Below are positions 4,425 to 38,581 of a DNA stretch of 64,000 nucleotides, piece by piece. Each line of letters begins with the position of its first letter. Position 1 is the first letter of the stretch. A program made the translations under genes and the position numbers. The stretch is from positions 1 to 64,000 of the IMG/VR virus record IMGVR_UViG_3300028676_000005. The stretch is one strand, 5' to 3'. The notes beneath the pieces were generated by a model, which ran no database searches, had not been told where the DNA came from, and saw only the letters and a list, made by a program, of their open reading frames with translations.

Positions 4425-6533
4425 TTAATGTTCGTCTGAAACCAAACGCGTCACTTTGCTGTTCATGAAGTACAACCCTAACGATTCCAGGATGGCATAG
4501 ATGCTCTTAAAGTTCTGTTGGATAATGAGACGTGTGTCTACAATAGGCAACAACTCTTTAGGAATACCTCCCAGGTTAGCTACCATGTCTTCAGGGATAT
4601 ACACCGCAGTCAACTTAGGCCGACTTTCGATATACGCACTAAAGGTTTTGGTATAAGCACTTTCACCCAAGGAATCAAAATAGACTTTCATTTTGCTCTT
4701 GTTGTGTAATGCCAGGTTGACTTTAACCGCACGATAAGGCAACTCTGGTGCTTTGCCGTAACTAGCGCTAAACACAGATTCCCACAGCTCGTGATAATAA
4801 TGAATGGAGGACTCAGGATTAGTGTAGGCTGATTCCTCTTTAATGTTTTCTTTACGCAACCAAGTTACACCGCCAGTTTTAATGTCGGTGAACAATGCAC
4901 GTTCCAGATCGCCAATCTCACCAAGGATTTCAGCTGCATCAAGTTTCTTCTTCTTGTAGATGGCATCCAGTACATTTCGCATAAGCTTGTTAGTAAAGTC
5001 GCGTACCATCTTAGCGATTTTAATCCCTCTAAGGTGAACACCTTTAAGTTCTAACTTAGGCACCTTGTGCAAAACACCCTCAAGCATCAACTGCATGGCG
5101 TAATAGTGTTTAGACATAAGGGTGGTAACATACGAACTGAACAGGTATTCGTTCTTCATGGTCAAACGGTTACGGAACCGGTTAGCCACGTTCATGTTAA
5201 CACTTAGACGAGCGTGTTGGTCTACAGAAGCGCAACGAATAAAGTACGTCATCGCCGCGTTGAAGCAAATGCCACTTTCTTCGTCGTCAACGTAATCATC
5301 AATGATCATGTCAACGGAATAGATCATGGAGTCAGTGTCGGAAGTCAGAACGTTTTCACGAACCAACTCTTTGATACTGAAGATACTTGTAGGTGGGATG
5401 TCTGCCCGCAAGAAAGCACTAATAAAAGTAGCCCACTTACGTTCCATCTCCACATGGTATCCGTTTACATAAGCCATTTCATCTTTGTTTGGCTTACGAC
5501 CCAACTTAGTTACGATCATAGTCTCATAATCGTCGTTAGCTGGTTTGATACCGTCCTCTGCTTTAAAGCCTTCTGGCATTACAGGGATGTGGCACCATTC
5601 ATTAAAGAACCGTTTCATCAGCTCTTTGTTAGTGGTGTACAGCCCGCGCAAGTCCATTGTGCAGAGGATAATTGTTAGTTCAAGCTTGTTAAGCCCGCGC
5701 AAGAACATCCTGATCGCTTTAAGCTGACTAGGGTTGTTCCAGTAATAACCAGCGCAACGTTTAACCATGTCCATGACTTGGTCAACTGTTGCATAGTTCA
5801 TTTTGTATTCGTTGATTACATCTTGAATCTCATCACGACGAGAGAACGCCAAAGTGCTCAGGAAGAGCTCCATGGTCTTATCGTAGCTGAGCAGTAACCT
5901 GTTACCGGTAATCAGTCGTTCGTTAAGCAGGTTGGCCGTAGAGGTGACGATACGGCAAGTACTAGTCAACGACGTGTGACCAGACTTGTTAAACAGTGGG
6001 GTGCCTGATGAGGACATGCCGCCAGATTGTGCGTTGTTAAAGATCTTCAGCGCTTTCTGAAATTCGTCAAATGCTTTCTTGGCTTCGTCATCGCCAACTG
6101 CAATTGCTTCTTTCATCTTACCTTTATAAAGTGCGCGAAACTTCATAAAGGTTTCGGTACCAATCGAATTAACCGATTGTTCGTCGTCTGCGTGTTTGTA
6201 CGCTACTAACGAAGGAGACAATACCCAATTGTTTTGCCTAACTGTATTAAAGAACTCGTTGGCGCCCATTACAACAGGTACACGGTCACCGTGCTTGTTC
6301 TTTTTGAATACACCAAACTTTACTTCTTTAAAGCCATTCTCATTTGGTATGAAGACTTTTTCGCACAATTCCAATACGTGCTTGTAATCATGACCGTAAA
6401 AGTTTGCTAAGTAGATTGCCGCTTGTACGTGGTACGATTTAAGGATATCCCGATTGGGTACATAATCCTGTGCAATAAACGGAGAAAGTTTAACTTCTCT
6501 CGCTTTATCAAAATTCAAGACTTGAGCTGTCAT
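4425..6533 (-). CDS. Family B DNA polymerase, catalytic part of the split phiKZ-type polymerase (gp50-like)
   Basis: 702 aa. PolB motifs KIFNNAQSG (KxxxNxxG) and SDTDS. No 3'-5' exonuclease motifs visible. Synteny with chimallin. Confidence 0.85.
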   Translation of the reverse strand: MTAQVLNFDKAREVKLSPFIAQDYVPNRDILKSYHVQAAIYLANFYGHDYKHVLELCEKVFIPNENGFKEVKFGVFKKNKHGDRVPVVMGANEFFNTVRQNNWVLSPSLVAYKHADDEQSVNSIGTETFMKFRALYKGKMKEAIAVGDDEAKKAFDEFQKALKIFNNAQSGGMSSSGTPLFNKSGHTSLTSTCRIVTSTANLLNERLITGNRLLLSYDKTMELFLSTLAFSRRDEIQDVINEYKMNYATVDQVMDMVKRCAGYYWNNPSQLKAIRMFLRGLNKLELTIILCTMDLRGLYTTNKELMKRFFNEWCHIPVMPEGFKAEDGIKPANDDYETMIVTKLGRKPNKDEMAYVNGYHVEMERKWATFISAFLRADIPPTSIFSIKELVRENVLTSDTDSMIYSVDMIIDDYVDDEESGICFNAAMTYFIRCASVDQHARLSVNMNVANRFRNRLTMKNEYLFSSYVTTLMSKHYYAMQLMLEGVLHKVPKLELKGVHLRGIKIAKMVRDFTNKLMRNVLDAIYKKKKLDAAEILGEIGDLERALFTDIKTGGVTWLRKENIKEESAYTNPESSIHYYHELWESVFSASYGKAPELPYRAVKVNLALHNKSKMKVYFDSLGESAYTKTFSAYIESRPKLTAVYIPEDMVANLGGIPKELLPIVDTRLIIQQNFKSIYAILESLGLYFMNSKVTRLVSDEH

Positions 6534-9355: not shown

Positions 9356-10372
9356 TTACAGGATCAAACCATTGGCGTTGGCATTGCTTGCTTCAACGGT
9401 GCGGCTGACGAAGGTACTGCTGGTCTGCGCTTTGCGTTTTTCCAGTTCCGCCAGTTGTTCGGTCAGCGTGGCTACGGACTCGCCGTGGTCCAGCAACATG
9501 TGCATTTGGTTTACGCCTTCTGGCAGGACAGTATTCGGAGAGAAGACACCAATCGAACGAACCACAGCGCCTTCAAAAGCAACAGTGATGTTTTCACGCT
9601 TGTCGTACAGGCTCAGGTGGGCAACAGGAGTCTTGCCTTTGAACTTGGCCGGCTCGTCATAGAACGAGATGTGCGACAGGGTTGGTGCAACCTTGTAGTT
9701 CTTGGAGTAGTCCAGAATTTCCAGCAGGTCGCTGATGTCTTGTTCTTCGTTTTCACGAGTGGCGTACAGCGAGAGGAGCGAGATCTTGTTGATCAGTGCG
9801 CGGTCAATCTGGCCGCGGGTCTTGCCTGCTTCGTTACGGAATTCCATATAAGGAATTGCGGCGTTCAGTAGGTTAGGCCCGGTTTGCAGCAGCAGGGAGT
9901 GAACGGTCTTCAGGGAGTTTTCCATTTCTACCTGGGTGGTGTGGTCAGTGATGATTGCTACGACCACGCCTTTGTAGCCTTGTTGCTTCAACCAACGCAC
10001 GGTCAACAGAGCCAGCATGGAACCAGAACCACCGGCACCGGAGCACAGAACCACAACTACGCCTTTAGGACGGTTTTGAGTCAGGGTCTGGTCAACGAAA
10101 GGAATTGCTTCCTCGTAGTTGGCGCCCATTACTTTGCCGGAGCCTTGTGCTTCTTTTTCATTTGGGGTGCCGCCCTTAGGAGCAGGTACGCGGAACAGAG
10201 GAATGTTCAGTTCTGGCTTCAGGCGATTGTTGCCGCTGGCGTCGATAGCGATGTAACTGGCATTGGTGACACTGGCGCTCAGACCGCTGGTCTTCAACAG
10301 CATTGCCATGTTGATACCGGCGCCGCCACATGCGATGAAGCTCAATTCGGAATTAACAACTTGATTAGACAT
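9356..10372 (-). CDS. phuZ: Phage tubulin PhuZ
   Basis: 338 aa. Tubulin/FtsZ GTPase motifs ACGGAGINM, GSGK and CSGAGGSGS. Size and location match phiKZ gp39. Confidence 0.92.
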   Translation of the reverse strand: MSNQVVNSELSFIACGGAGINMAMLLKTSGLSASVTNASYIAIDASGNNRLKPELNIPLFRVPAPKGGTPNEKEAQGSGKVMGANYEEAIPFVDQTLTQNRPKGVVVVLCSGAGGSGSMLALLTVRWLKQQGYKGVVVAIITDHTTQVEMENSLKTVHSLLLQTGPNLLNAAIPYMEFRNEAGKTRGQIDRALINKISLLSLYATRENEEQDISDLLEILDYSKNYKVAPTLSHISFYDEPAKFKGKTPVAHLSLYDKRENITVAFEGAVVRSIGVFSPNTVLPEGVNQMHMLLDHGESVATLTEQLAELEKRKAQTSSTFVSRTVEASNANANGLIL

Positions 10373-10496: not shown

Positions 10497-10543
10497 AAAA
10501 AAAAGCCTCGTTCTCAGAACCCGATTAAAGGTCTGAGACGAGG
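10497..10543 (-). terminator. Rho-independent terminator closing the RNA island
   Basis: CCTCGTCTCAGA...TCTGAGAACGAGG hairpin followed by T8 on the minus strand. Confidence 0.75.
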
Positions 10544-10544
10544 G

Positions 10545-10860
10545 TGGAGTATCAAACGGTTACAAACTCTTGTACTTAAACAAGAGGCAGGAATATAAAC
10601 ACCAGGCCTTTCGTTATGTGCCAGTATATTCGCGGTTCGCAATACCGGTGGTTCACAAAAGGTCTGGCGGGAAGTTTTCATTGGTCTTTTTACATCGACC
10701 AGCAACCAACAAGCCTTGGGAGGTACCCGTTGGTTGGCTACAAAGGACTTCCTAACCTCTACAGCAAGCGACAAACACCAGGCGAAAAGAGACGTCCAAC
10801 TGACATCTCCGCAAACAGTGAAGGATGGCACTGTTTACTTACACGGCCGCTAGACCATGT
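10545..10860 (-). ncRNA. Putative structured non-coding RNA domain (hairpin series)
   Basis: Consecutive hairpins on the minus strand: GTAAACAGTG/CACTGTTTGC, GAGATGTC/GACGTCTC, GTAGCCAAC/GTTGGTTGC, CTCTTGT/ACAAGAG. No credible ORF. Confidence 0.45.
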
Positions 10861-10956
10861 TGGGTGGAAGACTGGATGGATTCGAACCACCGACCAGCGA
10901 GGAGGGTAAATGATACCCGAGGACTCCCCGTTCTAACCAACTGAACTACAGTCTTC
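10861..10956 (-). ncRNA. tRNA-like RNA A with extended anticodon arm (22-nt 'loop' folding into GGGTA/TACCC with a TCATT tip)
   Basis: Acceptor AAGACTG/CAGTCTT plus G-1:C73. D arm GTTC-AGTTGGTTA-GAAC. T arm GGTGG-TTCGAAT-CCATC. 15 extra nt in the anticodon arm. 3' end CCACCCA. Confidence 0.75.
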
Positions 10957-10961
10957 ACATT

Positions 10962-11050
10962 TGGGGGAAAGGGCAGGACTTGAACCTACGACCTCCGAAC
11001 AAAGGCATGACCATTCGCACGGTGCTCTAACCAACTGAGCTACAGTTCCC
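10962..11050 (-). ncRNA. tRNA-like RNA B with extended anticodon arm (18-nt 'loop', TCATG tip)
   Basis: Acceptor GGAACTG/CCTTTCC (2 mismatches) plus G-1:C73 and encoded CCA. D arm GCTC-AGTTGGTTA-GAGC. T arm GTAGG-TTCAAGT-CCTGC. 11 extra nt in the anticodon arm. Confidence 0.75.
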
Positions 11051-11206
11051 ATAAATCTTGACTCGTTTACATGTGATTGGTTGTCACACGCATACTTTCT
11101 GAGGGCACGAGGCACCACCCATTTGGCGAACACACCAGTAACCCACCACAGGCCCCAACATGTCGTTTATCAGAAAGTTTCATCACCCATTGCTAGGTAA
11201 AGAAAA

Positions 11207-11282
11207 TGGCTCCGCGACCTGGACTCGAACCAGGGACCAACAGATTAACAGTCTGCTGCTCTACCAACTGAGCTATCGCGGA
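11207..11282 (-). tRNA. trnN: tRNA-Asn (GTT)
   Basis: Canonical 76-nt cloverleaf, loop CT-GTT-AA, perfect acceptor stem, G73-CCA. Confidence 0.97.
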
Positions 11283-11414: not shown

Positions 11415-11490
11415 TGGCGGCGTAGCCAGGAGTCGAACCTGGAACCTTCGGTTTTGGAGACCGATGCTCTGCCAGTTGAGCTACTAGGCC
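11415..11490 (-). tRNA. trnW: tRNA-Trp (CCA)
   Basis: 76-nt cloverleaf, loop CT-CCA-AA, G73-CCA, C4.C69 mismatch. Confidence 0.95.
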
Positions 11491-11502
11491 TAATCTAAAT
11501 CT

Positions 11503-11586
11503 TGGGCGTCATTGGGTTCTTACCACGGGCCTTCAGCGGTGACCGACGACCAGGTCACACCCACGTTCTTCAGCCGAAGCAACGAC
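11503..11586 (-). ncRNA. ~80-nt stem-loop RNA with an acceptor-like terminus
   Basis: Closing stem GTCGTTG/CAATGAC followed by G-CCCA. Inner stems CTTCGGC/GCTGAAG and GTGACC/GGTCAC. G.U pairs form only on the minus strand. Confidence 0.5.
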
Positions 11587-11595
11587 TAAATCTTG

Positions 11596-11895
11596 AAATT
11601 GAATCCGTTAGCTATTATCAGGGTAGGAGACTGCCCGGTTACCAAGCCTGATAATAACTGAGTCACCTAGTCACGGAAAACAACGTAGGTAACTGCCAGG
11701 ACACCCCTGGCTGGTGTAACAGAGTTAATCCCCCGACTCCCATCTGTTACTTAACACGAACCACCAGCGTCATGGGTCAGTGTTAACATTTGAATTCAGG
11801 TAGGTCTACAGACTTTTACTGTACGTCATGAGTAACAGACCGGCCTCCAGATCTGTAACGGTTTTCTTCAGGGCGCAGGGCAGCGGCTAGAATAA
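11596..11895 (-). ncRNA. Putative structured ncRNA domain (large-loop hairpin series)
   Basis: Hairpins at 11611-11658, 11716-11750, ~11751-11796 and 11832-11859. No ORF. Confidence 0.5.
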
Positions 11896-12016
11896 GGTAG
11901 AGAGTGTGGGATTCGAACCCACGGGAGCAAGCTCACAGCCGGTTTCAAAGCCACCGCGCGGAAGACCGTACCGCAACTAATCCACCAGCCTCCTTCAACC
12001 ACTCGGACAACTCTCC
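11896..12016 (-). tRNA. tRNA-Ser(TGA)-like gene with a 35-nt insertion at position 31/32 or 32/33; no encoded CCA
   Basis: Acceptor GGAGAGT/ACTCTCT, Ser-type D arm TCCGAGTGGTTGAAGGA, anticodon stem GCTGG/CCGGC, long variable arm and T arm GTGGG-TTCGAAT-CCCAC. The 42-nt loop ends TTTGAAA. Confidence 0.7.
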
Positions 12017-12484: not shown

Positions 12485-12561
12485 TGGCGCAACCAAGGGG
12501 ACTCGAACCCCTGACCACCCGCGTGACAGGCGGGTATTCTAACCAACTGAACTATGGGTGC
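12485..12561 (-). tRNA. trnD: tRNA-Asp (GTC)
   Basis: 77-nt cloverleaf, loop CT-GTC-AC, G73-CCA, C4.T69 mismatch. Confidence 0.96.
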
Positions 12562-12574
12562 TTTGTATAACATA
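12561..12574 (-). promoter_or_regulatory. Late-type promoter/leader TATGTTATACAAAG (copy 1, ending at G1 of tRNA-Asp)
   Basis: Exact 14-bp repeat of 13119-13132. Begins with TATG, the phiKZ nvRNAP late promoter core. Confidence 0.6.
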
Positions 12575-13119
12575 GTAAATCGGGACGAAGTCGATATGAG
12601 TTCTACTCTCATACTCTCTACAAGTGATCGAAGTCACTAGCAGTCTGGATCGCCCTTCATCATCGGCTTTTCATCCTTAAGCGCAGTAAACCCTGACGAC
12701 CGTTAGGCTAGAGGGAACCCACATTGCCCAGGTTTATCCAGATACCATGGAACCCATGGATTCTTTTTCAACACCGTCATATAACAGTGTCGAGTAATAA
12801 GTTAAGGAGAGGTCGCAGACGTGAACCACGGTCCTCTCCTGACCTTGAGACTATGATAAGGGCGGCGCCGCCGATATCACGTAACAAGCCGCCTCACTTT
12901 GTCAGTAGCCAGCCCGCGTGCTTTGCCGCAGAAGCGGCTCCCGCGAAACTGGTCTGTAGTAGACTTAGTGTGACTAAGAGTCTTGACGGGACTCCCATAG
13001 GGTTTTGATAAGAGCGCCTGTCACAGCTAACCCCGACCATCATAATTCATCCGGCACCACCCTTAAGGCTCCGAACAGTTTCCCCAAAGGGAAATTCCGC
13101 GAGATCATTTACTGGTCTC
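12575..13119 (-). ncRNA. Putative ~545-nt structured non-coding RNA
   Basis: No credible ORF. At least eight hairpins. Starts after the same 14-nt promoter/leader as tRNA-Asp. Confidence 0.55.
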
Positions 13120-13132
13120 TTTGTATAACATA
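13119..13132 (-). promoter_or_regulatory. Late-type promoter/leader TATGTTATACAAAG (copy 2)
   Basis: Exact repeat of 12561-12574 at the 5' edge of the RNA island. Confidence 0.6.
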
Positions 13133-13139
13133 ACAACTC

Positions 13140-20566: not shown

Positions 20567-23500
20567 TTATGCTGCTTTTTTCTTGTTCTGCACCATACGC
20601 TTAGCTCTTTCGAGTTTGGCGTTTTCAATCAACGTATCTACTGTCAACAGTTTAGCTGCATCTGGTGGAAGCAGTTTGCTAAGCTTGATGATCTCAGCTT
20701 CCAAACGAATAGCCAAAATGTTGTCAGGAGTTTTAAGCAACTCTTCTGTAAACGCGGCAATCTTGAGACGGATGTTCTCAAAGAACTTCAACATCGAAGG
20801 ATCTACAGGAGGTGCTTTCTTGTCCTTACCTACATCGAGGAGACTTTGGGTCTCAATAAGAGCAAGCGCTGACATGATGCCGTAAAACGGTTTGTTTGCC
20901 CCCAACTTGATAAACCAGTAGGTAAGCAACCAGGAGATAACCAAGTCATCGTGCTGTTTCGAATCGTGGTCAATGCGATCGCCCTTAGTCCTTAGGTTAA
21001 TCAATTCATCGGCCAGCTTATCGTAGTTAATCCCATACCCAGTAATGGCAACCGCTTCTTGAATAAGACCATACAGGACCTTACGCGAGTTAGCTGTTGT
21101 CACAAACCCAAACAGATGTTTAAGTTTCAGATAGAAGTTCTTATCACGATAAGCAAACTTGGTGTTTTGAACAATCTCCAATTCTTTCTGATGGTTAACA
21201 GGGTCTTGATAGACTTGGTTGTAGATCCGTGTGAACGGGTCCATTCCTTTACTTGGCAAGATAATCAGCAAACTGTCGATCATGTGGTGAGCATAGTTAC
21301 GCTCAATCACCAACACACTGTTCTGAATAACTTCCAAGAGGTCCACGATAACCGCTGTCACATCGTCCAGGAGAGCCAAAGCGTAACGACCCACACCAAC
21401 TACCGTACCTGTCTTCATCGACCGTATAACGACCGTACAGGCGTCCTTGTTGATAGCAGAAGAGGTATCCACCCCAATGATGAAGTGATCGTTGTGTTCC
21501 TTCTTACTCATTTCAGCAAGTTTTTCTTGAGTAACAAAGAAGTCCACAAACAATCCACTATTGCGATACTCTTTGCTCCAGACACGTTCTCGTTTAACGT
21601 TGTTAATTGCCTCACGAGTAATGTCGTCGAACAAACGACTCTCACCATCCTCAACCCACATTAACAACAAGTCGATCTTGGCCTTAGCCAAAGTCAATTT
21701 GAGATCGTCAATGGTGCGTTTTACCCAGTCCTTGTTCTTACCTAGTTGCAGGTAGTTGTAAATCATGGATACCGCAGGAGAAGTAGTACTCTCCGGAGAT
21801 GCCCTAATCAACCGATCCTTCAGATGGCTTTCGCTGAACGAATCAAAGAACTTCTCACGCCACTCGGTAGCAGACATGAGTTTCTTGAACATGAACTCGC
21901 CACTCGGGTGAAGAGTAGTGTTCGGGGTGGTGATGTAACCAATACCGTACGTGATGCCAGCTTCTCGACAGAGTTCCATTTCCGTCAGAGCAGAAGGCAT
22001 CGAACCGTTGATGATCGCCTCAATCCAAGGAATGTATCCAGGCTCATCGAGGAACGTTGTACCTACCGTAAGACCACGACCAACGTCACCAGCGGCATCT
22101 TTACCGATCTGTGGAACGTTAATCGTTAATACGTTTACCTTATCGTCACCAAAAGACCTGTACGTCAGCGAGGTACCAGCATCCTTGTCCTTATACGTCG
22201 GGTTAACGAGGTACGTGGGGATACAGCTTCGCATCCGTTTAACAGCATCAATGAACTGAGCCCTGTTATCACTTTTCAGGGTAATAACGTGAGTCTTGTA
22301 ACCACGCCCATTGATGTAAGTCAGCCAGAAGTTAATAACCTGAACAGACACTGTGTTGTGAGTAACAATGAAGTCATCCGTTACGTACAGATGTTCCTCG
22401 TTGTCAACCTCAATACAGGTGCATTCATCATGACCAGCGTAAGACGTCTTGGTAATGAACAAACGGTTTTCTACATCTGGTCTTGGTGCATCTTTAAATC
22501 GGAAGTAACCAACTTCGTCTGGAAGGGTGACAACTACCGAATCTTTAAAACCTTTAGCTGTACCGCCAAGACTACGCGCCAGGTATTGAACCTGGTTAAT
22601 CAGGACCGGTGTAAGCCCTTCACAGAGAACACCAGACTTCGTTACCTGACCTTGGTCAAGAAACGCCTGTAGCGCAGCTGTACGGTCTTTAATAGAGCCT
22701 TCCAGATAGTCCGTGGGAAGGCCAGCTTCTCGACGAATACTGAAATCTTTGTTATTACCCATTGTCAGGTAATACGCGTCACCTTCAACCACCAACCGCA
22801 AATGCTTTGGCATATTGGTAGCAATGAAGTTAACAGCCGTAGTCGACAGGTTAGCCAACTTAAGCTTACCACCTTGCTGCTCTTGAGCAAACAAAGTACC
22901 CATGATGTACGGGTCGGTAATGTGATTCTGGCAAGGACCGTCTTCAGGGGTAATTACTGGCAACTCAACCTTCACACCTTTCTTGATAAGGGTGATGATT
23001 TGTGCTGTGGTGTATTCATCCCAAACTGGCTCACCATTGATCTCGTTAGAGTGGTCACCAATGTTCCACAAATGCTCAGCACCAGCGTCAGTGCGACGTC
23101 CGTCAGAACACTCAATTGTGTAAAGACGTTTTTTACCTTGTGGGTGAATACCGATAACCGTTGTAGGTTTACCAAGCCGGTCAATAACCTCATCGCCAAT
23201 ACGAAGGTCTTTTATCTTGACCCAACGATCTTCAAGACGAATCGTGCCATTACCCGGCATGTAACGCTTGACGCGAACCTTAGAACTGTTACGCTGGAAC
23301 TTGCCTTGCTGACGAGGCATGATCATGTAAGAAGTAATGTGGTTCAGGTAGTTCCAGATAAAACTAATGTTACCCCGGTTTGCCTGAAAGAAACGGTCAG
23401 AACGAACCTTGCAGATCTCTCGTAGAAAATACCAGAAGTTAGTTCGGCATTCTTCCATGATCCACATGCGCTGATCGTTAGTCAGATCTTCCGCATATGG

Positions 23501-23854
23501 GTCCACACCTTTCAGCATTGGGTTGTTAAGTTGCAAACAGAAGAAGTAGTTCTTAATCCCCTGCCTTTTAAAAATCTCTGCCGTACGTAAGAAACTTTTG
23601 TTAGGGGTTTCCATATCCGGAACTGCCCGATAACGCATGAAGTCCTTAAGAAAACGTACAGTCTTAATGCTGTGCAAACTATCTTCGTTGAAGTGAGCCA
23701 TTAACAACTCATCTTCGGTACGTGCTTTCCAATCGACACGCAGTCTATCGTCGTCAATCAATTCCTTAGGAAGATTGTGTGTCCCCAGATAGTCGTACAT
23801 GCCCTTGGCCGATTCGAGTAATCTAGCGTACTCTACATTCGTGACCATGACCAA
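20567..23854 (-). CDS. terL: Terminase large subunit (intein-containing)
   Basis: Walker A MPRQQGK|T interrupted by an intein, Walker B TTFLDE, YITT coupling motif, nuclease IIGVDTS and HDDLVIS. About 780 aa after splicing. Confidence 0.93.
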   Translation of the reverse strand: MVMVTNVEYARLLESAKGMYDYLGTHNLPKELIDDDRLRVDWKARTEDELLMAHFNEDSLHSIKTVRFLKDFMRYRAVPDMETPNKSFLRTAEIFKRQGIKNYFFCLQLNNPMLKGVDPYAEDLTNDQRMWIMEECRTNFWYFLREICKVRSDRFFQANRGNISFIWNYLNHITSYMIMPRQQGKFQRNSSKVRVKRYMPGNGTIRLEDRWVKIKDLRIGDEVIDRLGKPTTVIGIHPQGKKRLYTIECSDGRRTDAGAEHLWNIGDHSNEINGEPVWDEYTTAQIITLIKKGVKVELPVITPEDGPCQNHITDPYIMGTLFAQEQQGGKLKLANLSTTAVNFIATNMPKHLRLVVEGDAYYLTMGNNKDFSIRREAGLPTDYLEGSIKDRTAALQAFLDQGQVTKSGVLCEGLTPVLINQVQYLARSLGGTAKGFKDSVVVTLPDEVGYFRFKDAPRPDVENRLFITKTSYAGHDECTCIEVDNEEHLYVTDDFIVTHNTVSVQVINFWLTYINGRGYKTHVITLKSDNRAQFIDAVKRMRSCIPTYLVNPTYKDKDAGTSLTYRSFGDDKVNVLTINVPQIGKDAAGDVGRGLTVGTTFLDEPGYIPWIEAIINGSMPSALTEMELCREAGITYGIGYITTPNTTLHPSGEFMFKKLMSATEWREKFFDSFSESHLKDRLIRASPESTTSPAVSMIYNYLQLGKNKDWVKRTIDDLKLTLAKAKIDLLLMWVEDGESRLFDDITREAINNVKRERVWSKEYRNSGLFVDFFVTQEKLAEMSKKEHNDHFIIGVDTSSAINKDACTVVIRSMKTGTVVGVGRYALALLDDVTAVIVDLLEVIQNSVLVIERNYAHHMIDSLLIILPSKGMDPFTRIYNQVYQDPVNHQKELEIVQNTKFAYRDKNFYLKLKHLFGFVTTANSRKVLYGLIQEAVAITGYGINYDKLADELINLRTKGDRIDHDSKQHDDLVISWLLTYWFIKLGANKPFYGIMSALALIETQSLLDVGKDKKAPPVDPSMLKFFENIRLKIAAFTEELLKTPDNILAIRLEAEIIKLSKLLPPDAAKLLTVDTLIENAKLERAKRMVQNKKKAA
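22355..23299 (-). mobile_element. Class 3 intein (315 aa) with a degenerate LAGLIDADG endonuclease
   Basis: Starts FQRNSSKV, block B AEHLW, block F CTCIEV, ends IVTHN before extein Thr. Eroded blocks DPYIMGTLFAQ and AALQAFLDQG. Confidence 0.88.
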
Positions 23855-36684: not shown

Positions 36685-37449
36685 TTAAAGGCCTTTGTTT
36701 GACACGTACCCGGGAATAATCCGGCTAAGCGCAGAAGAATCCTGATAGAACTCACCCAAACGTTTATCAGCTTCTACAACAAATTGCTCCAAATTAATGG
36801 AGCGTTTTGGGATTTCCAGATTATCTCGGATTTCCACAAGCAAGGGAACTACCTGCTCAAAGACCCCTTCTTTACTGTCTTCAGCATCAACCATCCAGTG
36901 AGCTTTTGGATTTTCTTCAGTAGTGCGTTCAAACTCGAACTGAAGACGATCTTGATAGTCAATGTTTTTTGCATCGAATTGGTCTGTCAGCTTTTCAGCG
37001 TCGGACACACGCGCATTAAACACTTCGGCATCACCGTGCATCACAATAGTCTTGTCTGGCATCAACCCAATTGCATGATGATGCAGCTGCTCCAATGTAA
37101 ACCTGGATAGTCGTTCACCGGCGCCCTGGTAAGCGTACGTAGTCAACACATAACGATCACAGAGAACAACTTTGCCAGCTTCAAGGGCTGACTTGATAAC
37201 AGTCTCTACGTGTTGTACACGAGCGGTCATGTACAACATTGCATTTGCCAACGGTGTTAACTTCTCACCATTTACAATGCCACTCCGACAGAGAACACGA
37301 AGCTCACTAGCCGCAGGAGTGCCACCAGGTTCATGCGTACGAATGTAGTCAACATTGTTTTCTTTGAGCCACTGCTCGATTGAGTCACACAAAGAAGTCT
37401 TGCCACTGCCACCGATACCCTCTACTACAAGAAAATAACCTTTATACAT
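36685..37449 (-). CDS. tmk: Thymidylate kinase
   Basis: P-loop VEGIGGSGKTS, HEPGGT, CDRY...AYQG, PDKTI motifs. Confidence 0.93.
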   Translation of the reverse strand: MYKGYFLVVEGIGGSGKTSLCDSIEQWLKENNVDYIRTHEPGGTPAASELRVLCRSGIVNGEKLTPLANAMLYMTARVQHVETVIKSALEAGKVVLCDRYVLTTYAYQGAGERLSRFTLEQLHHHAIGLMPDKTIVMHGDAEVFNARVSDAEKLTDQFDAKNIDYQDRLQFEFERTTEENPKAHWMVDAEDSKEGVFEQVVPLLVEIRDNLEIPKRSINLEQFVVEADKRLGEFYQDSSALSRIIPGYVSNKGL

Positions 37450-38581
37450 CTCTATCCCCTAAAAAACGTTCAGCAACATTTTGTCTCAGAGCAACAGAAA
37501 CTGTAGGCCTGTCTTCTGAGATCCGTTCGCCAACTTGTTCATCTTCGGCAACAATAACATCGCCTTTTACAGAAGATGGGTGGTCTTCAAGGATGGGCTC
37601 TTCTACAACTGGGGGCGTTGGCCATTCAAAACGACTTGCTGCGCTATACAGCTCTTTTACTGCATTTTTAAAATTGTCTTTAAGGACTGTAAGCCGCGAT
37701 TCGTAAATAAAGTTTTCACGAGCATCAATAAACGGCTGATCATTAACAAGGTTAATAAGAAATTGCGCCTCTCGTGGCAAGTTCAAATCTTTCCAAGTAA
37801 CCATTTTCAGCAAACGCTTTACAAAGAAACCAAGATCAGTTTCTTCTATTTGCAAAGTGTACTTTTCTTCAATTGGTATCTTCGCATCCACATACTCTTG
37901 TTTTTTGTTGTCGAATGGTGTGTGGATTACCCAAGAGTTTTCTTCTTCATACTTGCACCACCCATTAGGAATAATGAATGGTTCAAGAGCCGGGTCTAAT
38001 TTACTCCAGACTTGTTGTTTGGTCATTTCCCACAATGGGGCGCGGAAAGGAATTGCCAAACGATCGGAGTTAGAAAGGCGACCCAAGGTTACGGGCAGCT
38101 TTAGAAACTCTTGGTACTCGGCTGCACTGAAATCGTAATCATCGTAACTTACATCAGATGAGTCTTCTTTAAGCCAACCGATTAACACCGTAGGGGATTC
38201 AACACCTCTAGAGTGTGCAACCAAAGCAGAACGCAGTTTAGTTAATGCCATAACTACTGAAATCTGTTGGTTAATATTGTTTGCCTGGCGGTTTTGCGTC
38301 TCGCCATGATATCCGTTACTGTGAAGCACATTTAAATAAGGCTTGGCAAGATAATAGAGAACTTCTACAATCTCACCAGGATATTGCTTTTTATCTAAAT
38401 CTTTAGAACGGAAGTAATCAAGAGTTTTGTTCATAGACAAAAGCTCTCCCACACTACCTTCCGCCACACCGGACACGTTGATATACACAACGGTAATCTT
38501 GGCGCGCATGGTCATTGCATGTTGAAGCAAGTAAGTGGACTCAAGACCACCTGAAACTGGGACGATGATATTCAAAGACAT
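37442..38581 (-). CDS. PP-loop (QueC-like) adenine nucleotide alpha hydrolase
   Basis: N-terminal IIVPVSGGLESTYLL, later PLWEMTKQQV as in QueC. The C-terminal Zn-binding Cys cluster is not seen. Confidence 0.6.
   Translation of the reverse strand: MSLNIIVPVSGGLESTYLLQHAMTMRAKITVVYINVSGVAEGSVGELLSMNKTLDYFRSKDLDKKQYPGEIVEVLYYLAKPYLNVLHSNGYHGETQNRQANNINQQISVVMALTKLRSALVAHSRGVESPTVLIGWLKEDSSDVSYDDYDFSAAEYQEFLKLPVTLGRLSNSDRLAIPFRAPLWEMTKQQVWSKLDPALEPFIIPNGWCKYEEENSWVIHTPFDNKKQEYVDAKIPIEEKYTLQIEETDLGFFVKRLLKMVTWKDLNLPREAQFLINLVNDQPFIDARENFIYESRLTVLKDNFKNAVKELYSAASRFEWPTPPVVEEPILEDHPSSVKGDVIVAEDEQVGERISEDRPTVSVALRQNVAERFLGDRDV

What the first reader, a model, noticed from the sequence alone, without database searches (positions are those of the whole stretch)
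10861..11050. Tandem tRNA-like genes with extended anticodon arms, both capped by a U-CAU-N pentaloop and both carrying G-1:C73
Seen in sequence: two adjacent genes have intact D arms, T arms (TTCGAAT, TTCAAGT), standard 5-nt variable loops and acceptor stems, but the 7-nt anticodon loop is replaced by 22 nt (A) and 18 nt (B). The extra sequence differs between the two, yet each folds into an added helix (GGGTA/TACCC; CGAA-T-GG/CC-TTTG) with a pentaloop TCATT or TCATG centred on CAU. Both also pair G-1 with C73. In A, no single excision regenerates a U33 loop, so A does not look like a simple intron. Established knowledge: CAU is the Met/fMet/Ile2 anticodon, VapC toxins cleave the tRNAfMet anticodon arm, and G-1:C73 is the tRNAHis identity element. 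Inference: these are non-decoding tRNA mimics, such as decoys for anticodon nucleases or for TilS/MetRS/IF2, or ribosome ligands. Convergence on the same tip argues against random decay.
Basis: partly seen in the sequence, partly recalled or inferred. Interest (0 to 1): 0.88.

Follow-up and report, generated by a model that had tools for sequence, protein, structure and literature searches.

The report
Non-decoding tRNA-His-like RNAs, jumbo phage
Two neighbouring genes in an uncultured nucleus-forming jumbo phage encode RNAs that keep the whole tRNA body and the end-signature of histidine tRNA but carry a long rigid hairpin instead of an anticodon, so they almost certainly cannot read codons; they belong to a conserved family whose job is still unknown.

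Summary
On the minus strand, 10965-11049 (B) and 10867-10955 (A) are tRNA-like genes (Rfam tRNA 40 and 44 bits). Their anticodon loops are replaced by 18 and 22 nt that fold into an extra helix, and both have G-1 opposite C73.

Fourteen homologues from related phiKZ-like (chimallivirus) contigs sit at the same place: the end of the tRNA array, upstream of a conserved non-coding RNA and phuZ.

- **Conserved:** the tRNA core, a long base-paired anticodon arm with strong covariation in 13 of 14 (one member has a normal-length arm of 6 bp and a 5-nt loop), and U-2, G-1 and C73 in 14 of 14 members. None of 29 ordinary tRNAs in the same arrays has G-1 or C73.
- **Not conserved:** the CAU tip. Orthologues carry UCGCA, UAGCU, UUGUA, CUC, UCCGUU, GACCA. 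The "convergent CAU" idea, and decoys for Met/fMet/Ile2-specific factors, are therefore not supported.
- **Not an intron:** no single excision restores a normal anticodon loop in 9 of 11 members tested.

Best reading: these are non-decoding tRNA mimics with a tRNA-His-type acceptor end. They are probably released by RNase P with G-1 kept and recognised by host HisRS. Function is inferred, not shown. I rate it a new variant of a known kind, of moderate to high interest.

The parts
10965..11049 (-). tRNA-like gene B, positions 1-73. Canonical D arm, 5-nt variable loop and T arm. Acceptor stem with two Y.Y mismatches (5:68, 6:67). Anticodon arm of about 11 bp.
   Evidence: Rfam tRNA 40.4 bits. 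Sequence read. Five B-type orthologues keep 24 of 27 pairs, and substitutions break only 0-1 pairs (P about 1e-3 against random placement).
11000..11017 (-). The 18 nt that replace B's anticodon loop: helix CGAA(U)GG/CCUUUG capped by UCAUG (11006-11010).
   Evidence: The helix is kept in orthologues as CAAGGG, CAAAGG, CGAAGG or CGGAG paired with CCUUUG or CUCUG. The tip differs in every one.
11050..11051 (-). U-2 and G-1 of B. G-1 can pair with C73 (10965).
   Evidence: U-2 and G-1 are invariant in 14 of 14 family members.
10962..10964 (-). CCA encoded directly after B's C73.
   Evidence: The same arrangement occurs in L001, L064, L070 and L104_2991.
10867..10955 (-). tRNA-like gene A, positions 1-73. 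Perfect 7-bp acceptor stem, canonical D and T arms. Basal stem GGGAG/CUCGC, a pyrimidine-rich internal loop, then a distal helix.
   Evidence: Rfam tRNA 44.1 bits. Orthologues L062_4401 and L064_267 show compensatory changes in both the basal and the distal helix.
10902..10923 (-). The 22 nt that replace A's anticodon loop: UCCUC, then GGGUA UCAUU UACCC, then UC. The tip is 10909-10913.
   Evidence: L064A has GGAGA/UUUCC with a different tip.
10956..10957 (-). U-2 and G-1 of A. G-1 can pair with C73 (10867). The preceding spacer AAUGU follows B's CCA.
   Evidence: The same CCA-AAUGU-G junction lies upstream of members in L062, L064, L065, L069, L070, L071 and L074.
10497..10861 (-). Context: a conserved non-coding RNA. 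It starts AACAUGGUCUAGCGGCCGUGUA immediately after A and ends at an intrinsic terminator (10497-10543).
   Evidence: It is about 95% identical in L001 and carries a 1-nt indel, so it is not coding. Blocks of it are conserved across 13 loci. Terminator read.
11207..11282 (-). Context: canonical tRNA-Asn(GUU) of the same array.
11415..11490 (-). Context: canonical tRNA-Trp(CCA).
11896..12016 (-). Context: a third tRNA-like gene (C). It is class II (long variable arm) and has about 35 extra nt in the anticodon arm.
   Evidence: ARAGORN with introns allowed. Conserved in L001 with a diverged insert and a 30-nt longer variable arm. Fold.
12485..12561 (-). Context: canonical tRNA-Asp(GUC).

Best explanation
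A and B are two paralogous members of a conserved family of phage-encoded tRNA mimics that do not decode. The family lives in one clade of uncultured phiKZ-like (chimallivirus, nucleus-forming) jumbo phages. It sits at the 3' end of the tRNA array, just before a conserved non-coding RNA and phuZ.

**Anatomy (shown).**
- Each member keeps the full L-shape core of a tRNA: U8, A14, G18G19, the G15:C48-type variable loop, the T54-C56 loop, and covarying D, T and acceptor stems.
- In 13 of 14 members the anticodon stem-loop is replaced by a rod of about 10-12 stacked pairs. The pairing is maintained by compensatory change. The tip loop is free to vary.
- All members carry U-2, G-1 and C73. This is the acceptor-end signature of bacterial tRNA-His.

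**Mechanism (inferred).**
- The RNA is transcribed with the array.
- Host RNase P cuts between U-2 and G-1, as it does for tRNA-His. This leaves an 8-bp acceptor helix.
- The product is bound, and probably histidylated, by host HisRS, which reads mainly G-1:C73.
- The lengthened arm and the lack of a 7-nt U33 loop keep it off the ribosome's decoding site.
- It therefore acts through its body and acceptor end, not through its tip. Possible roles are a ligand, competitor or decoy in the HisRS/tRNA-His pathway or for a factor that attacks tRNA bodies, or a non-ribosomal aminoacyl carrier.
For: **Genome type.** The window encodes PhuZ, split RNAP beta subunits and a divergent DNA polymerase. Relatives encode chimallin.

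**Family and synteny.** PhuZ homologues at 49-93% identity led to contigs that all have a gene-free tRNA region upstream of phuZ. These regions hold 83-90-nt tRNA hits.

**Covariation.** 89.9% of cells pair, 20 of 28 pairs change on both sides, and 0 of 500 shuffles reach this. In the added helix, 5 of 6 pairs covary. B-type substitutions break 0-1 pairs, P about 1e-3.

**Acceptor end.**
- G-1 and C73 occur in 14 of 14 members.
- The 29 canonical tRNAs of the same loci have N-1 = U16/A7/C6/G0 and N73 = G18/A7/U4/C0. Fisher p = 1.3e-10 on the first 12 members.
- The preferred U sits at -1 in normal tRNAs and at -2 in the family. That is what a one-nucleotide shift of the RNase P site predicts (established knowledge of tRNA-His processing).

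**No conserved decoding identity.**
- No excision solution exists in 9 of 11 members.
- ARAGORN's forced calls differ between orthologues: Stop-UUA, Ile-AAU, Ile-GAU, Ser-AGA and undetermined.

**tRNA-His is otherwise missing.** No tRNA-His(GUG) is present in any of the 14 loci (window plus 13 relatives). Asn, Asp and Tyr, the other GUN tRNAs, recur.

**Host.** The phage tRNA-Asn body is identical to that of Pseudomonadaceae and Nevskiales genomes. That fits a gammaproteobacterial host, which would use G-1:C73.

**Precedent.** Irregular G-1 tRNAs with a non-His anticodon are charged by E. coli HisRS yet are not used in translation (PMC5389517). G-1 is the major HisRS element (PMC4357726 abstract).
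Against: - There is no expression, end-mapping or charging data. Everything beyond the anatomy is inference.
- Only 5 of 14 members encode CCA directly after C73. The others have C-rich tails (CACCCA, CUCCA, CCCA, CAUCCC, CUCCCU, AAC) and would need trimming and CCA addition.
- B-type acceptor stems carry two conserved mismatches, which could impair recognition by HisRS or EF-Tu.
- A more derived relative in L075 has A-1:U73. This preserves the extra pair but not His identity. The 8th base pair itself may be what matters.
- Body similarity to annotated phage tRNAs is inconsistent: His for L067, but Met, Ile or Thr for L065 and L071.
- The family is absent from some close lineages (the L068/L100-L102/L119 lineage), so it is dispensable.
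- No tRNA-dependent enzyme or synthetase was found among the window's proteins.
Confidence: 0.5

Rival explanations
1. Processing punctuation. The tRNA-like fold is kept only as an RNase P/RNase Z-type cleavage signal. It releases the neighbouring tRNAs and sets the 5' end of the conserved downstream non-coding RNA, as tRNA-like elements do for MALAT1/mascRNA or the MHV68 tRNA-miRNA units. The anticodon arm needs only to be a stable hairpin.
For: - In 11 of 13 loci the conserved RNA (AACAUGG...) begins 0-3 nt after the last tRNA or tRNA-like gene.
- The unit ends at an intrinsic terminator before phuZ's own promoter-like TATATTAC.
- The tip is unconstrained.
- A derived form (L069_5422, L073_5288, L075_4937) has lost the D loop but keeps the acceptor and T arms.
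Against: - Ordinary tRNAs occupy the same junction in some lineages: Gln in L068/L101 and Asn in L100. No special tRNA-like gene is needed there.
- Punctuation does not explain the invariant G-1:C73 and U-2.
- It does not explain tandem duplication of members (window, L064, L069, L104).
- It does not explain retention of all the tertiary-core nucleotides.
Confidence: 0.2
2. Decoy or shield against a host tRNA-directed defence that recognises the tRNA body or acceptor end. Examples would be acceptor-stem or T-loop tRNases, or GNAT-type toxins acting on charged tRNA. The lengthened, variable arm makes the decoy uncleavable or non-toxic in translation.
For: - Phage tRNA arrays are known counter-defence tools (established knowledge).
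- Gene content turns over quickly: A is absent from L001, B is replaced by tRNA-Ser in L062, and several loci hold tandem copies.
- The arm and tip diverge quickly while the core stays conserved.
Against: No defence or anti-defence gene is linked to the family. No conserved nuclease target sequence is present in the arm. This rival overlaps the best explanation rather than excluding it.
Confidence: 0.15
3. One reading: decoys built around a CAU tip for factors that read the Met/fMet/Ile2 anticodon (VapC, TilS, MetRS, IF2).
For: Both window copies and L062A have U-CAU-N tips. L065's body resembles phage tRNA-Met at 72-75% identity.
Against: CAU is absent from every other orthologue: UCGCA, UAGCU, UUGUA, AUCGCUA, CUC, UCCGUU, UAAC and GACCA. 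The loop is 5 nt, closed by a Watson-Crick pair, not a 7-nt U-turn loop. The tip evolves at about the rate of unconstrained spacer.
Confidence: 0.04
4. Intron-containing pre-tRNAs. The extra nucleotides are removed (protein-dependent splicing, or cleavage plus repair ligation) to give a normal decoder. This would parallel the "enigmatic introns" reported in huge-phage tRNAs.
For: - Short inserts at the canonical 37/38 site that restore a normal loop do exist in other viral contigs: 9 of 48 extended tRNA-like genes.
- Such introns were reported for Lak megaphages (bioRxiv 10.1101/356790).
Against: - No single excision restores U33 + R37 + a 5-bp stem in 9 of 11 members. The two that allow it give AGA, at a frequency expected by chance (7-19% of shuffled arms).
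- There is no bulge-helix-bulge: B-type arms are continuous helices.
- There is no group I intron hit.
- No conserved anticodon can be derived.
Confidence: 0.05
5. Decaying tRNA pseudogenes with no function.
For: The family is missing from some lineages. B has acceptor mismatches. The single-sequence folding z-scores of the window copies are weak.
Against: - Compensatory changes occur in every helix, including the added one.
- U-2, G-1 and C73 are invariant.
- The genes are far better conserved than the flanking spacer.
- They persist down to 49% PhuZ identity.
Confidence: 0.03

Closest known systems
Bacterial tRNA-His (encoded G-1 paired with C73; RNase P cuts at -2/-1)
   Same: G-1:C73 with U at -2 in all 14 members. 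The tRNA core is canonical. Some members have C73-CCA.
   Different: No GUG anticodon and no 7-nt anticodon loop. In 13 of 14 members the anticodon arm is about twice the normal length. It cannot be filed as a tRNA-His.
Irregular G-1 tRNAs in acidobacterial polycistrons (Mukai et al. 2017, NAR, PMC5389517)
   Same: tRNA genes in arrays that carry G-1 without a His anticodon. They were shown to be charged by E. coli HisRS yet not used in translation, and were proposed to be regulatory RNAs.
   Different: Those have normal anticodon loops and 8/4-type branches, and they are bacterial. The RNAs here are phage-encoded and have rod-like anticodon arms and a 7/5 branch plus G-1.
"Enigmatic introns" in tRNAs of Lak megaphages and other huge phages (Devoto et al., bioRxiv 10.1101/356790)
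   Same: Over-long tRNA genes in very large phage genomes that bacterial tRNA finders miss.
   Different: Those were interpreted as excisable introns that leave a defined anticodon. Here no excision gives a decoder, and the insert is a covarying helix.
Histidine-accepting tRNA-like structures at the 3' ends of plant RNA viruses (TLS-His; PMC8127992)
   Same: Viral RNA that mimics the acceptor side of tRNA-His without decoding. This is a functional analogy.
   Different: TLS-His is a pseudoknotted 3' end of an RNA genome in eukaryotic hosts. It has no sequence or architectural homology to this family.
tRNA-like processing elements (mascRNA, MHV68 tRNA-like units) and the stable RNAs of the T4 tRNA cluster (from memory)
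   Same: A tRNA-like fold next to another non-coding RNA. It may be used by RNase P or RNase Z.
   Different: Those lack a conserved G-1:C73 signature and a complete tRNA core combined with a doubled anticodon arm.

Membership tests
Canonical decoding tRNA | Cloverleaf with D and T arms and the tertiary-core nucleotides | tested here: met
   Rfam tRNA 40-55 bits over model positions 1-71. The D and T helices are 100% paired across 11 members and covary.
Canonical decoding tRNA | 5-bp anticodon stem with a 7-nt loop, U33 and purine 37 | tested here: not met
   Arms are 26-33 nt, against 17 in a normal tRNA, in 13 of 14 members. L104_2991 has a normal-length arm but folds as 6 bp plus a 5-nt loop. 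Loops are 3-10 nt and closed by pairs.
tRNA-His | G-1 paired with C73 | tested here: met
   14 of 14 members, against 0 of 29 canonical tRNAs in the same loci.
tRNA-His | GUG anticodon | tested here: not met
   No conserved GUG in any arm. Tips differ in every lineage.
tRNA-His | Aminoacylation by HisRS | not testable with these tools
   Needs an in vitro or in vivo charging assay.
Intron-containing tRNA (archaeal/eukaryal type) | Bulge-helix-bulge at the splice sites, or excision at 37/38 that restores a normal loop | tested here: not met
   B-type arms are continuous helices. No excision solution exists in 9 of 11 members.
Intron-containing tRNA (bacterial group I) | Group I ribozyme core in the anticodon loop | tested here: not met
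   Inserts are only 11-15 nt. No Rfam intron hit at E <= 1.
Anticodon-nuclease decoy for tRNA-fMet/Met/Ile2 | Conserved CAU-containing target loop | tested here: not met
   CAU occurs only in the window/L062 lineage.
Y RNA-like YrlA / tmRNA / tRNA-Sec | Match to the curated covariance model | tested here: not met
   YrlA scores 20.7 bits against a gathering threshold of 69. tRNA-Sec scores 22 bits against 47, and that hit lies on element C, not on A or B. ARAGORN finds no tmRNA.
Irregular G-1 tRNAs (Mukai 2017) | G-1 with a non-His anticodon in a tRNA polycistron | tested here: met
   Array context and G-1. The comparison paper was read.
Irregular G-1 tRNAs (Mukai 2017) | 8/4 or 9/3 acceptor/T branch with a normal anticodon loop | tested here: not met
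   The T stem is 5 bp and the acceptor is 7 bp plus G-1:C73. The anticodon loop is absent.

The most novel reading that the evidence does not exclude
Nucleus-forming jumbo phages of this clade make a dedicated, histidine-chargeable but ribosome-excluded tRNA mimic. It would be used away from the ribosome in one of several ways: to tune or sequester host HisRS and the tRNA-His pool, to carry an aminoacyl group for a non-ribosomal reaction, or to absorb a tRNA-directed host defence. It would also be one visible lineage of a much wider, undescribed class of rod-armed tRNA mimics in large phages. In a narrow IMG/VR pattern scan, 27 of 48 over-long tRNA-like genes had no excision that yields a decoder.
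Probability: 0.25. Interest if true: 0.85.

Novelty: new variant of a known kind. Interest (0 to 1): 0.62.

Why it matters
Phage tRNA genes are usually explained by codon supply or by replacing tRNAs destroyed by host defences. This family keeps everything that enzymes read on the body and acceptor end of a tRNA. It specifically keeps the histidine identity mark, and it has discarded the part that reads codons. If the RNAs are expressed and charged, that points to a use of tRNA mimicry by DNA phages outside decoding.

The family also gives a concrete, testable example for the unexplained over-long tRNA genes reported in huge phages. It warns that annotating such genes as "tRNA with intron", or with forced anticodons, is unsafe. 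ARAGORN assigned Stop, Ile and Ser to different members of this one family.

Tried and rejected
1. **Intron reading.** I enumerated every single excision that leaves N26 + 5-7-5 + a 4-5-nt variable loop. There was no solution for 9 of 11 members. The two solutions found were inconsistent and at chance frequency.
2. **CAU convergence.** Rejected on orthologue tips.
3. **Coding reading.**
   - ORF 10933-11133(-) runs through B. The 1-nt bulge indel between the window and L001 shifts its frame, and the substitution pattern is that of RNA pairing.
   - ORF 10616-10909(+) is broken by a 1-nt indel in L001.
4. **Isotype ancestry by BLAST against annotated phage tRNAs.** Inconsistent results: His, Met, Ile, Thr. 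Left unresolved.
5. **Protein context.** Pfam and PHROGs scans of about 35 window ORFs found no synthetase, RNA ligase, tRNA-splicing enzyme or tRNA-dependent transferase. There was only a sub-threshold QueC-like hit.
6. **Cultured relatives.** FishSpeaker and RisingSun have no member at the phuZ locus. BLAST of A+B against 50,697 phage records found only D-arm matches.
7. **Metagenome pattern scan.** It returned only the known contigs plus unrelated extended tRNA-like genes.
8. **Literature.** I found no description of this family.

Full report
**1. What is at the coordinates**

The two genes lie on the minus strand. Default ARAGORN reports only three normal tRNAs in the window: Asn 11207-11282, Trp 11415-11490 and Asp 12485-12561. 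Rfam's tRNA model also hits 10965-11049 (B, 40.4 bits) and 10867-10955 (A, 44.1 bits). Both hits are end to end, with 22 and 26 nt where the model expects 11.

- The D arm (GCUC or GUUC, AGUUGGUUA), the 5-nt variable loops (AGGUC, UGGUC) and the T arms (UUCAAGU, UUCGAAU) are canonical.
- B has 18 nt (11000-11017) and A has 22 nt (10902-10923) in place of a 7-nt loop.
- These fold as CGAA(U)GG/CCUUUG and GGGUA/UACCC, capped by UCAUG and UCAUU.
- G-1 (11050 in B, 10956 in A) faces C73 (10965 in B, 10867 in A).

Three corrections apply.
- B's acceptor stem has two adjacent pyrimidine mismatches (5:68, 6:67).
- Each basal anticodon stem has one mismatch.
- Only B has CCA directly after C73.

**2. 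What genome this is**

The window encodes PhuZ tubulin (9356-10372, minus strand), split RNA polymerase beta subunits, a divergent DNA polymerase and virion proteins typical of phiKZ-like phages. Relatives encode chimallin.

No cultured phage is close. The best PhuZ identity is 37%. The source is an uncultured 229-kb contig.

The phage tRNA-Asn body is identical to tRNA-Asn of Pseudomonadaceae and Nevskiales genomes. That fits a gammaproteobacterial host.

**3. Relatives**

PhuZ homologues at 40-93% identity were traced to their contigs. Those with 49% identity or more all have a 1.6-2.6-kb gene-free stretch upstream of phuZ that holds tRNAs.

At its downstream end most carry one or two 83-90-nt tRNA-like genes homologous to A and B.
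- B type: L001, L064, L070, L069.
- A type: L062, L064.
- Intermediate forms: L065/L099, L067, L071, L074.
- L104 holds a tandem pair.

Gene content shifts between lineages.
- A is cleanly absent from L001.
- tRNA-Ser replaces B in L062.
- The L068/L100-L102/L119 lineage has an ordinary tRNA-Gln or tRNA-Asn at the junction instead.
- Loci with 47% PhuZ identity or less, and the cultured FishSpeaker and RisingSun, have none.

**4. What is conserved**

On an 11-sequence alignment with the cloverleaf plus the added helix:
- 89.9% of cells pair, 20 of 28 pairs change on both sides, and 0 of 500 shuffles reach this.
- Slid controls give 39-53% pairing.
- The added helix has 5 of 6 covarying pairs.

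Among five B-type genes, 24 of 27 pairs are kept in each. Between any two, 0-2 pairs change status, despite 11-26 differences in all but the closest pair (L001/L064, 3 differences). For the window copy against each of the other four, random placement of the same number of changes does as well with P = 0.0006-0.005.

The helix sequence differs completely between clades: CGAAGG/CCUUUG, GUAGAAG/CUUCUAC, GGGUA/UACCC, CGGAG/CUCUG, GGGUGA/UCACCC, AUGGC/GCCAU. The long paired arm is therefore selected as structure.

The second conserved feature is the acceptor end.
- U-2, G-1 and C73 occur in 14 of 14 members.
- The 29 ordinary tRNAs of the same loci never have G-1 or C73, and all 29 encode CCA. Fisher p = 1.3e-10 on the first 12 members.
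- Ordinary tRNAs prefer U at -1 (16 of 29). The family has it at -2. That is what a one-nucleotide upstream shift of the RNase P cut would predict. RNase P is known to cut tRNA-His precursors this way (established knowledge).

**5. What is not conserved**

The tip is not conserved. Across the family it reads UCAUG, UCGCA, UAGCU, UUGUA, AUCGCUA, UCAUU, (C)UAAC(G), UCCGUU, CUC, GACCA, or a 10-nt loop. CAU is confined to the window and its nearest relative L062.

Three or four of the five tip positions differ between phages with 86-93% identical PhuZ. This matches the poorly alignable spacer next to the gene. The shared U-CAU in A and B is best explained as coincidence or local conversion in one lineage.

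**6. Not introns**

I enumerated every single excision that leaves a 5-7-5 arm with U33, R37 and at most one stem mismatch. There was no solution for 9 of 11 members. The two members that have solutions give AGA-type loops at the frequency expected from shuffled arms (7-19%).

ARAGORN's forced calls for orthologues are mutually inconsistent: Stop-UUA, Ile-AAU, Ile-GAU, Ser-AGA and undetermined. There is no bulge-helix-bulge and no group I hit.

**7. Interpretation**

Shown: this is a conserved, structurally constrained family of tRNA mimics with a doubled anticodon arm, an unconstrained tip and a tRNA-His-type acceptor end.

Inferred:
- RNase P processing retains G-1.
- Host HisRS recognises the RNA.
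- The RNA is excluded from decoding.

Support for the inference:
- G-1 is the major HisRS determinant (PMC4357726 abstract).
- Irregular G-1 tRNAs with a Thr anticodon are charged by E. coli HisRS but are not used in translation (PMC5389517).
- No locus has a real tRNA-His. Asn, Asp and Tyr, the other three GUN-anticodon tRNAs, recur.

Caveats:
- Most members lack CCA directly after C73.
- B-type stems have mismatches.
- A derived relative in L075 has A-1:U73, which preserves the pair but not His identity.
- Body similarity by BLAST is inconsistent.
- No linked enzyme was found.

The main rival is a processing-punctuation role. In 11 of 13 loci a conserved non-coding RNA starting AACAUGG begins within 0-3 nt of the last tRNA or tRNA-like gene, and it runs to a terminator before phuZ. 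But ordinary tRNAs serve at that junction in some lineages, and punctuation does not explain G-1:C73.

**8. Wider picture**

A narrow IMG/VR pattern scan used this D loop, this T loop and 7-24 extra nt. It found 48 distinct over-long tRNA-like genes, many on contigs of 150-420 kb.

| Class | Count |
|---|---|
| Normal anticodon arm; extra nt 3' of it (long variable arm or giant-virus intron) | 9 |
| Allow a canonical 37/38 excision | 9 |
| Allow another excision | 3 |
| Allow no excision | 27 |

"Enigmatic" tRNA introns in huge phages were noted before (bioRxiv 10.1101/356790). The rod-armed, non-excisable kind and the G-1:C73 family do not appear in the papers I could search.

**9. Verdict**

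- I rate it a new variant of a known kind (irregular, non-decoding tRNA-like RNAs), with a clear and cheap experimental path.

Noticed in passing
window 11896-12016 (-): A third over-long tRNA-like gene (C). It is class II, with D loop GAGUGGUUGAA, a long variable arm and A73, and it resembles the tRNA-Tyr of relatives. About 35 extra nt in the anticodon arm form a long hairpin. In L001 the insert has diverged and the variable arm is 30 nt longer.
   Followed up: partly
window 10497-10861 (-): A conserved non-coding RNA of about 365 nt. It starts AACAUGGUCUAGCGGCCGUGUA right after A and ends at a strong intrinsic terminator (10497-10543). Blocks such as GGUUAGGAGGUCC and AAUGAAAACCUCCC are conserved across 13 loci down to 49% PhuZ identity, and the GGAGG/CCUCC pairing covaries. 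There is no Rfam match.
   Followed up: partly
window about 11500-11890 (-) and 12562-13139 (-): Other stretches of the 2.8-kb gene-free region are 95-100% identical to L001, while neighbouring spacers are unalignable. These may be further unknown structured RNAs. The motifs UAUGUUAUACAAAG (directly before tRNA-Asp and once more upstream) and CAAGAUUUA (before B, before Trp and at one other site) look like phage promoter or processing signals.
   Followed up: no
L069:5422-5497, L073:5288-5363, L075:4937-5021: A more derived tRNA-like form sits at the same junction. It has an acceptor stem GAGACUU or AAGGUUG plus a T arm, but its D arm is replaced by a 6-bp hairpin. L069 and L073 have G-1:C73. 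L075 has A-1:U73, a compensatory change of the extra pair.
   Followed up: partly
window 10965-11049 (-) and B-type orthologues: The two pyrimidine-pyrimidine mismatches at acceptor positions 5:68 and 6:67 are conserved as mismatches in all five B-type genes (C.U or U.C, plus U.C). A-type genes and the intermediate forms pair normally there. Unexplained.
   Followed up: partly
L041, L051, L077, L079/L087 (IMG/VR and JGI contigs): A separate family of extended tRNA-like genes. The anticodon arm reads CGA-hairpin-AGA, and the hairpin covaries in length and sequence (GGGA/UCCC against GGGAAA/UUUCCC).
   Followed up: no
L076 (= L012) 4951-5041, L080, L083: Extended tRNA-like genes whose flanks are complementary, so the acceptor helix is lengthened by 4-7 further pairs (for example AGCGGUG...CACCGCU). 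L076 and L083 also have G-1:C73. L080 is followed by a T run.
   Followed up: no
window 20567-23854 (-): The terminase large-subunit ORF is 1095 aa. It has terminase matches only in the N-terminal part and extra DnaC/primase-like matches. It may hold an intein or an inserted domain.
   Followed up: no
window 37442-38581 (-): A 379-aa ORF with a sub-threshold QueC-like (PP-loop ATPase) Pfam hit (E = 0.004) and a PHROG of unknown function. It lies next to a thymidylate kinase. The link to the GUN (queuosine-family) tRNAs of the array is only a thought.
   Followed up: partly
L071:4507-5292; L070:5378-5390: An HNH/NUMOD4 homing-endonuclease-like ORF sits inside the tRNA array of L071. It might drive the turnover of tRNA genes. 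In L070 the member is followed by an encoded CCACCA.
   Followed up: no
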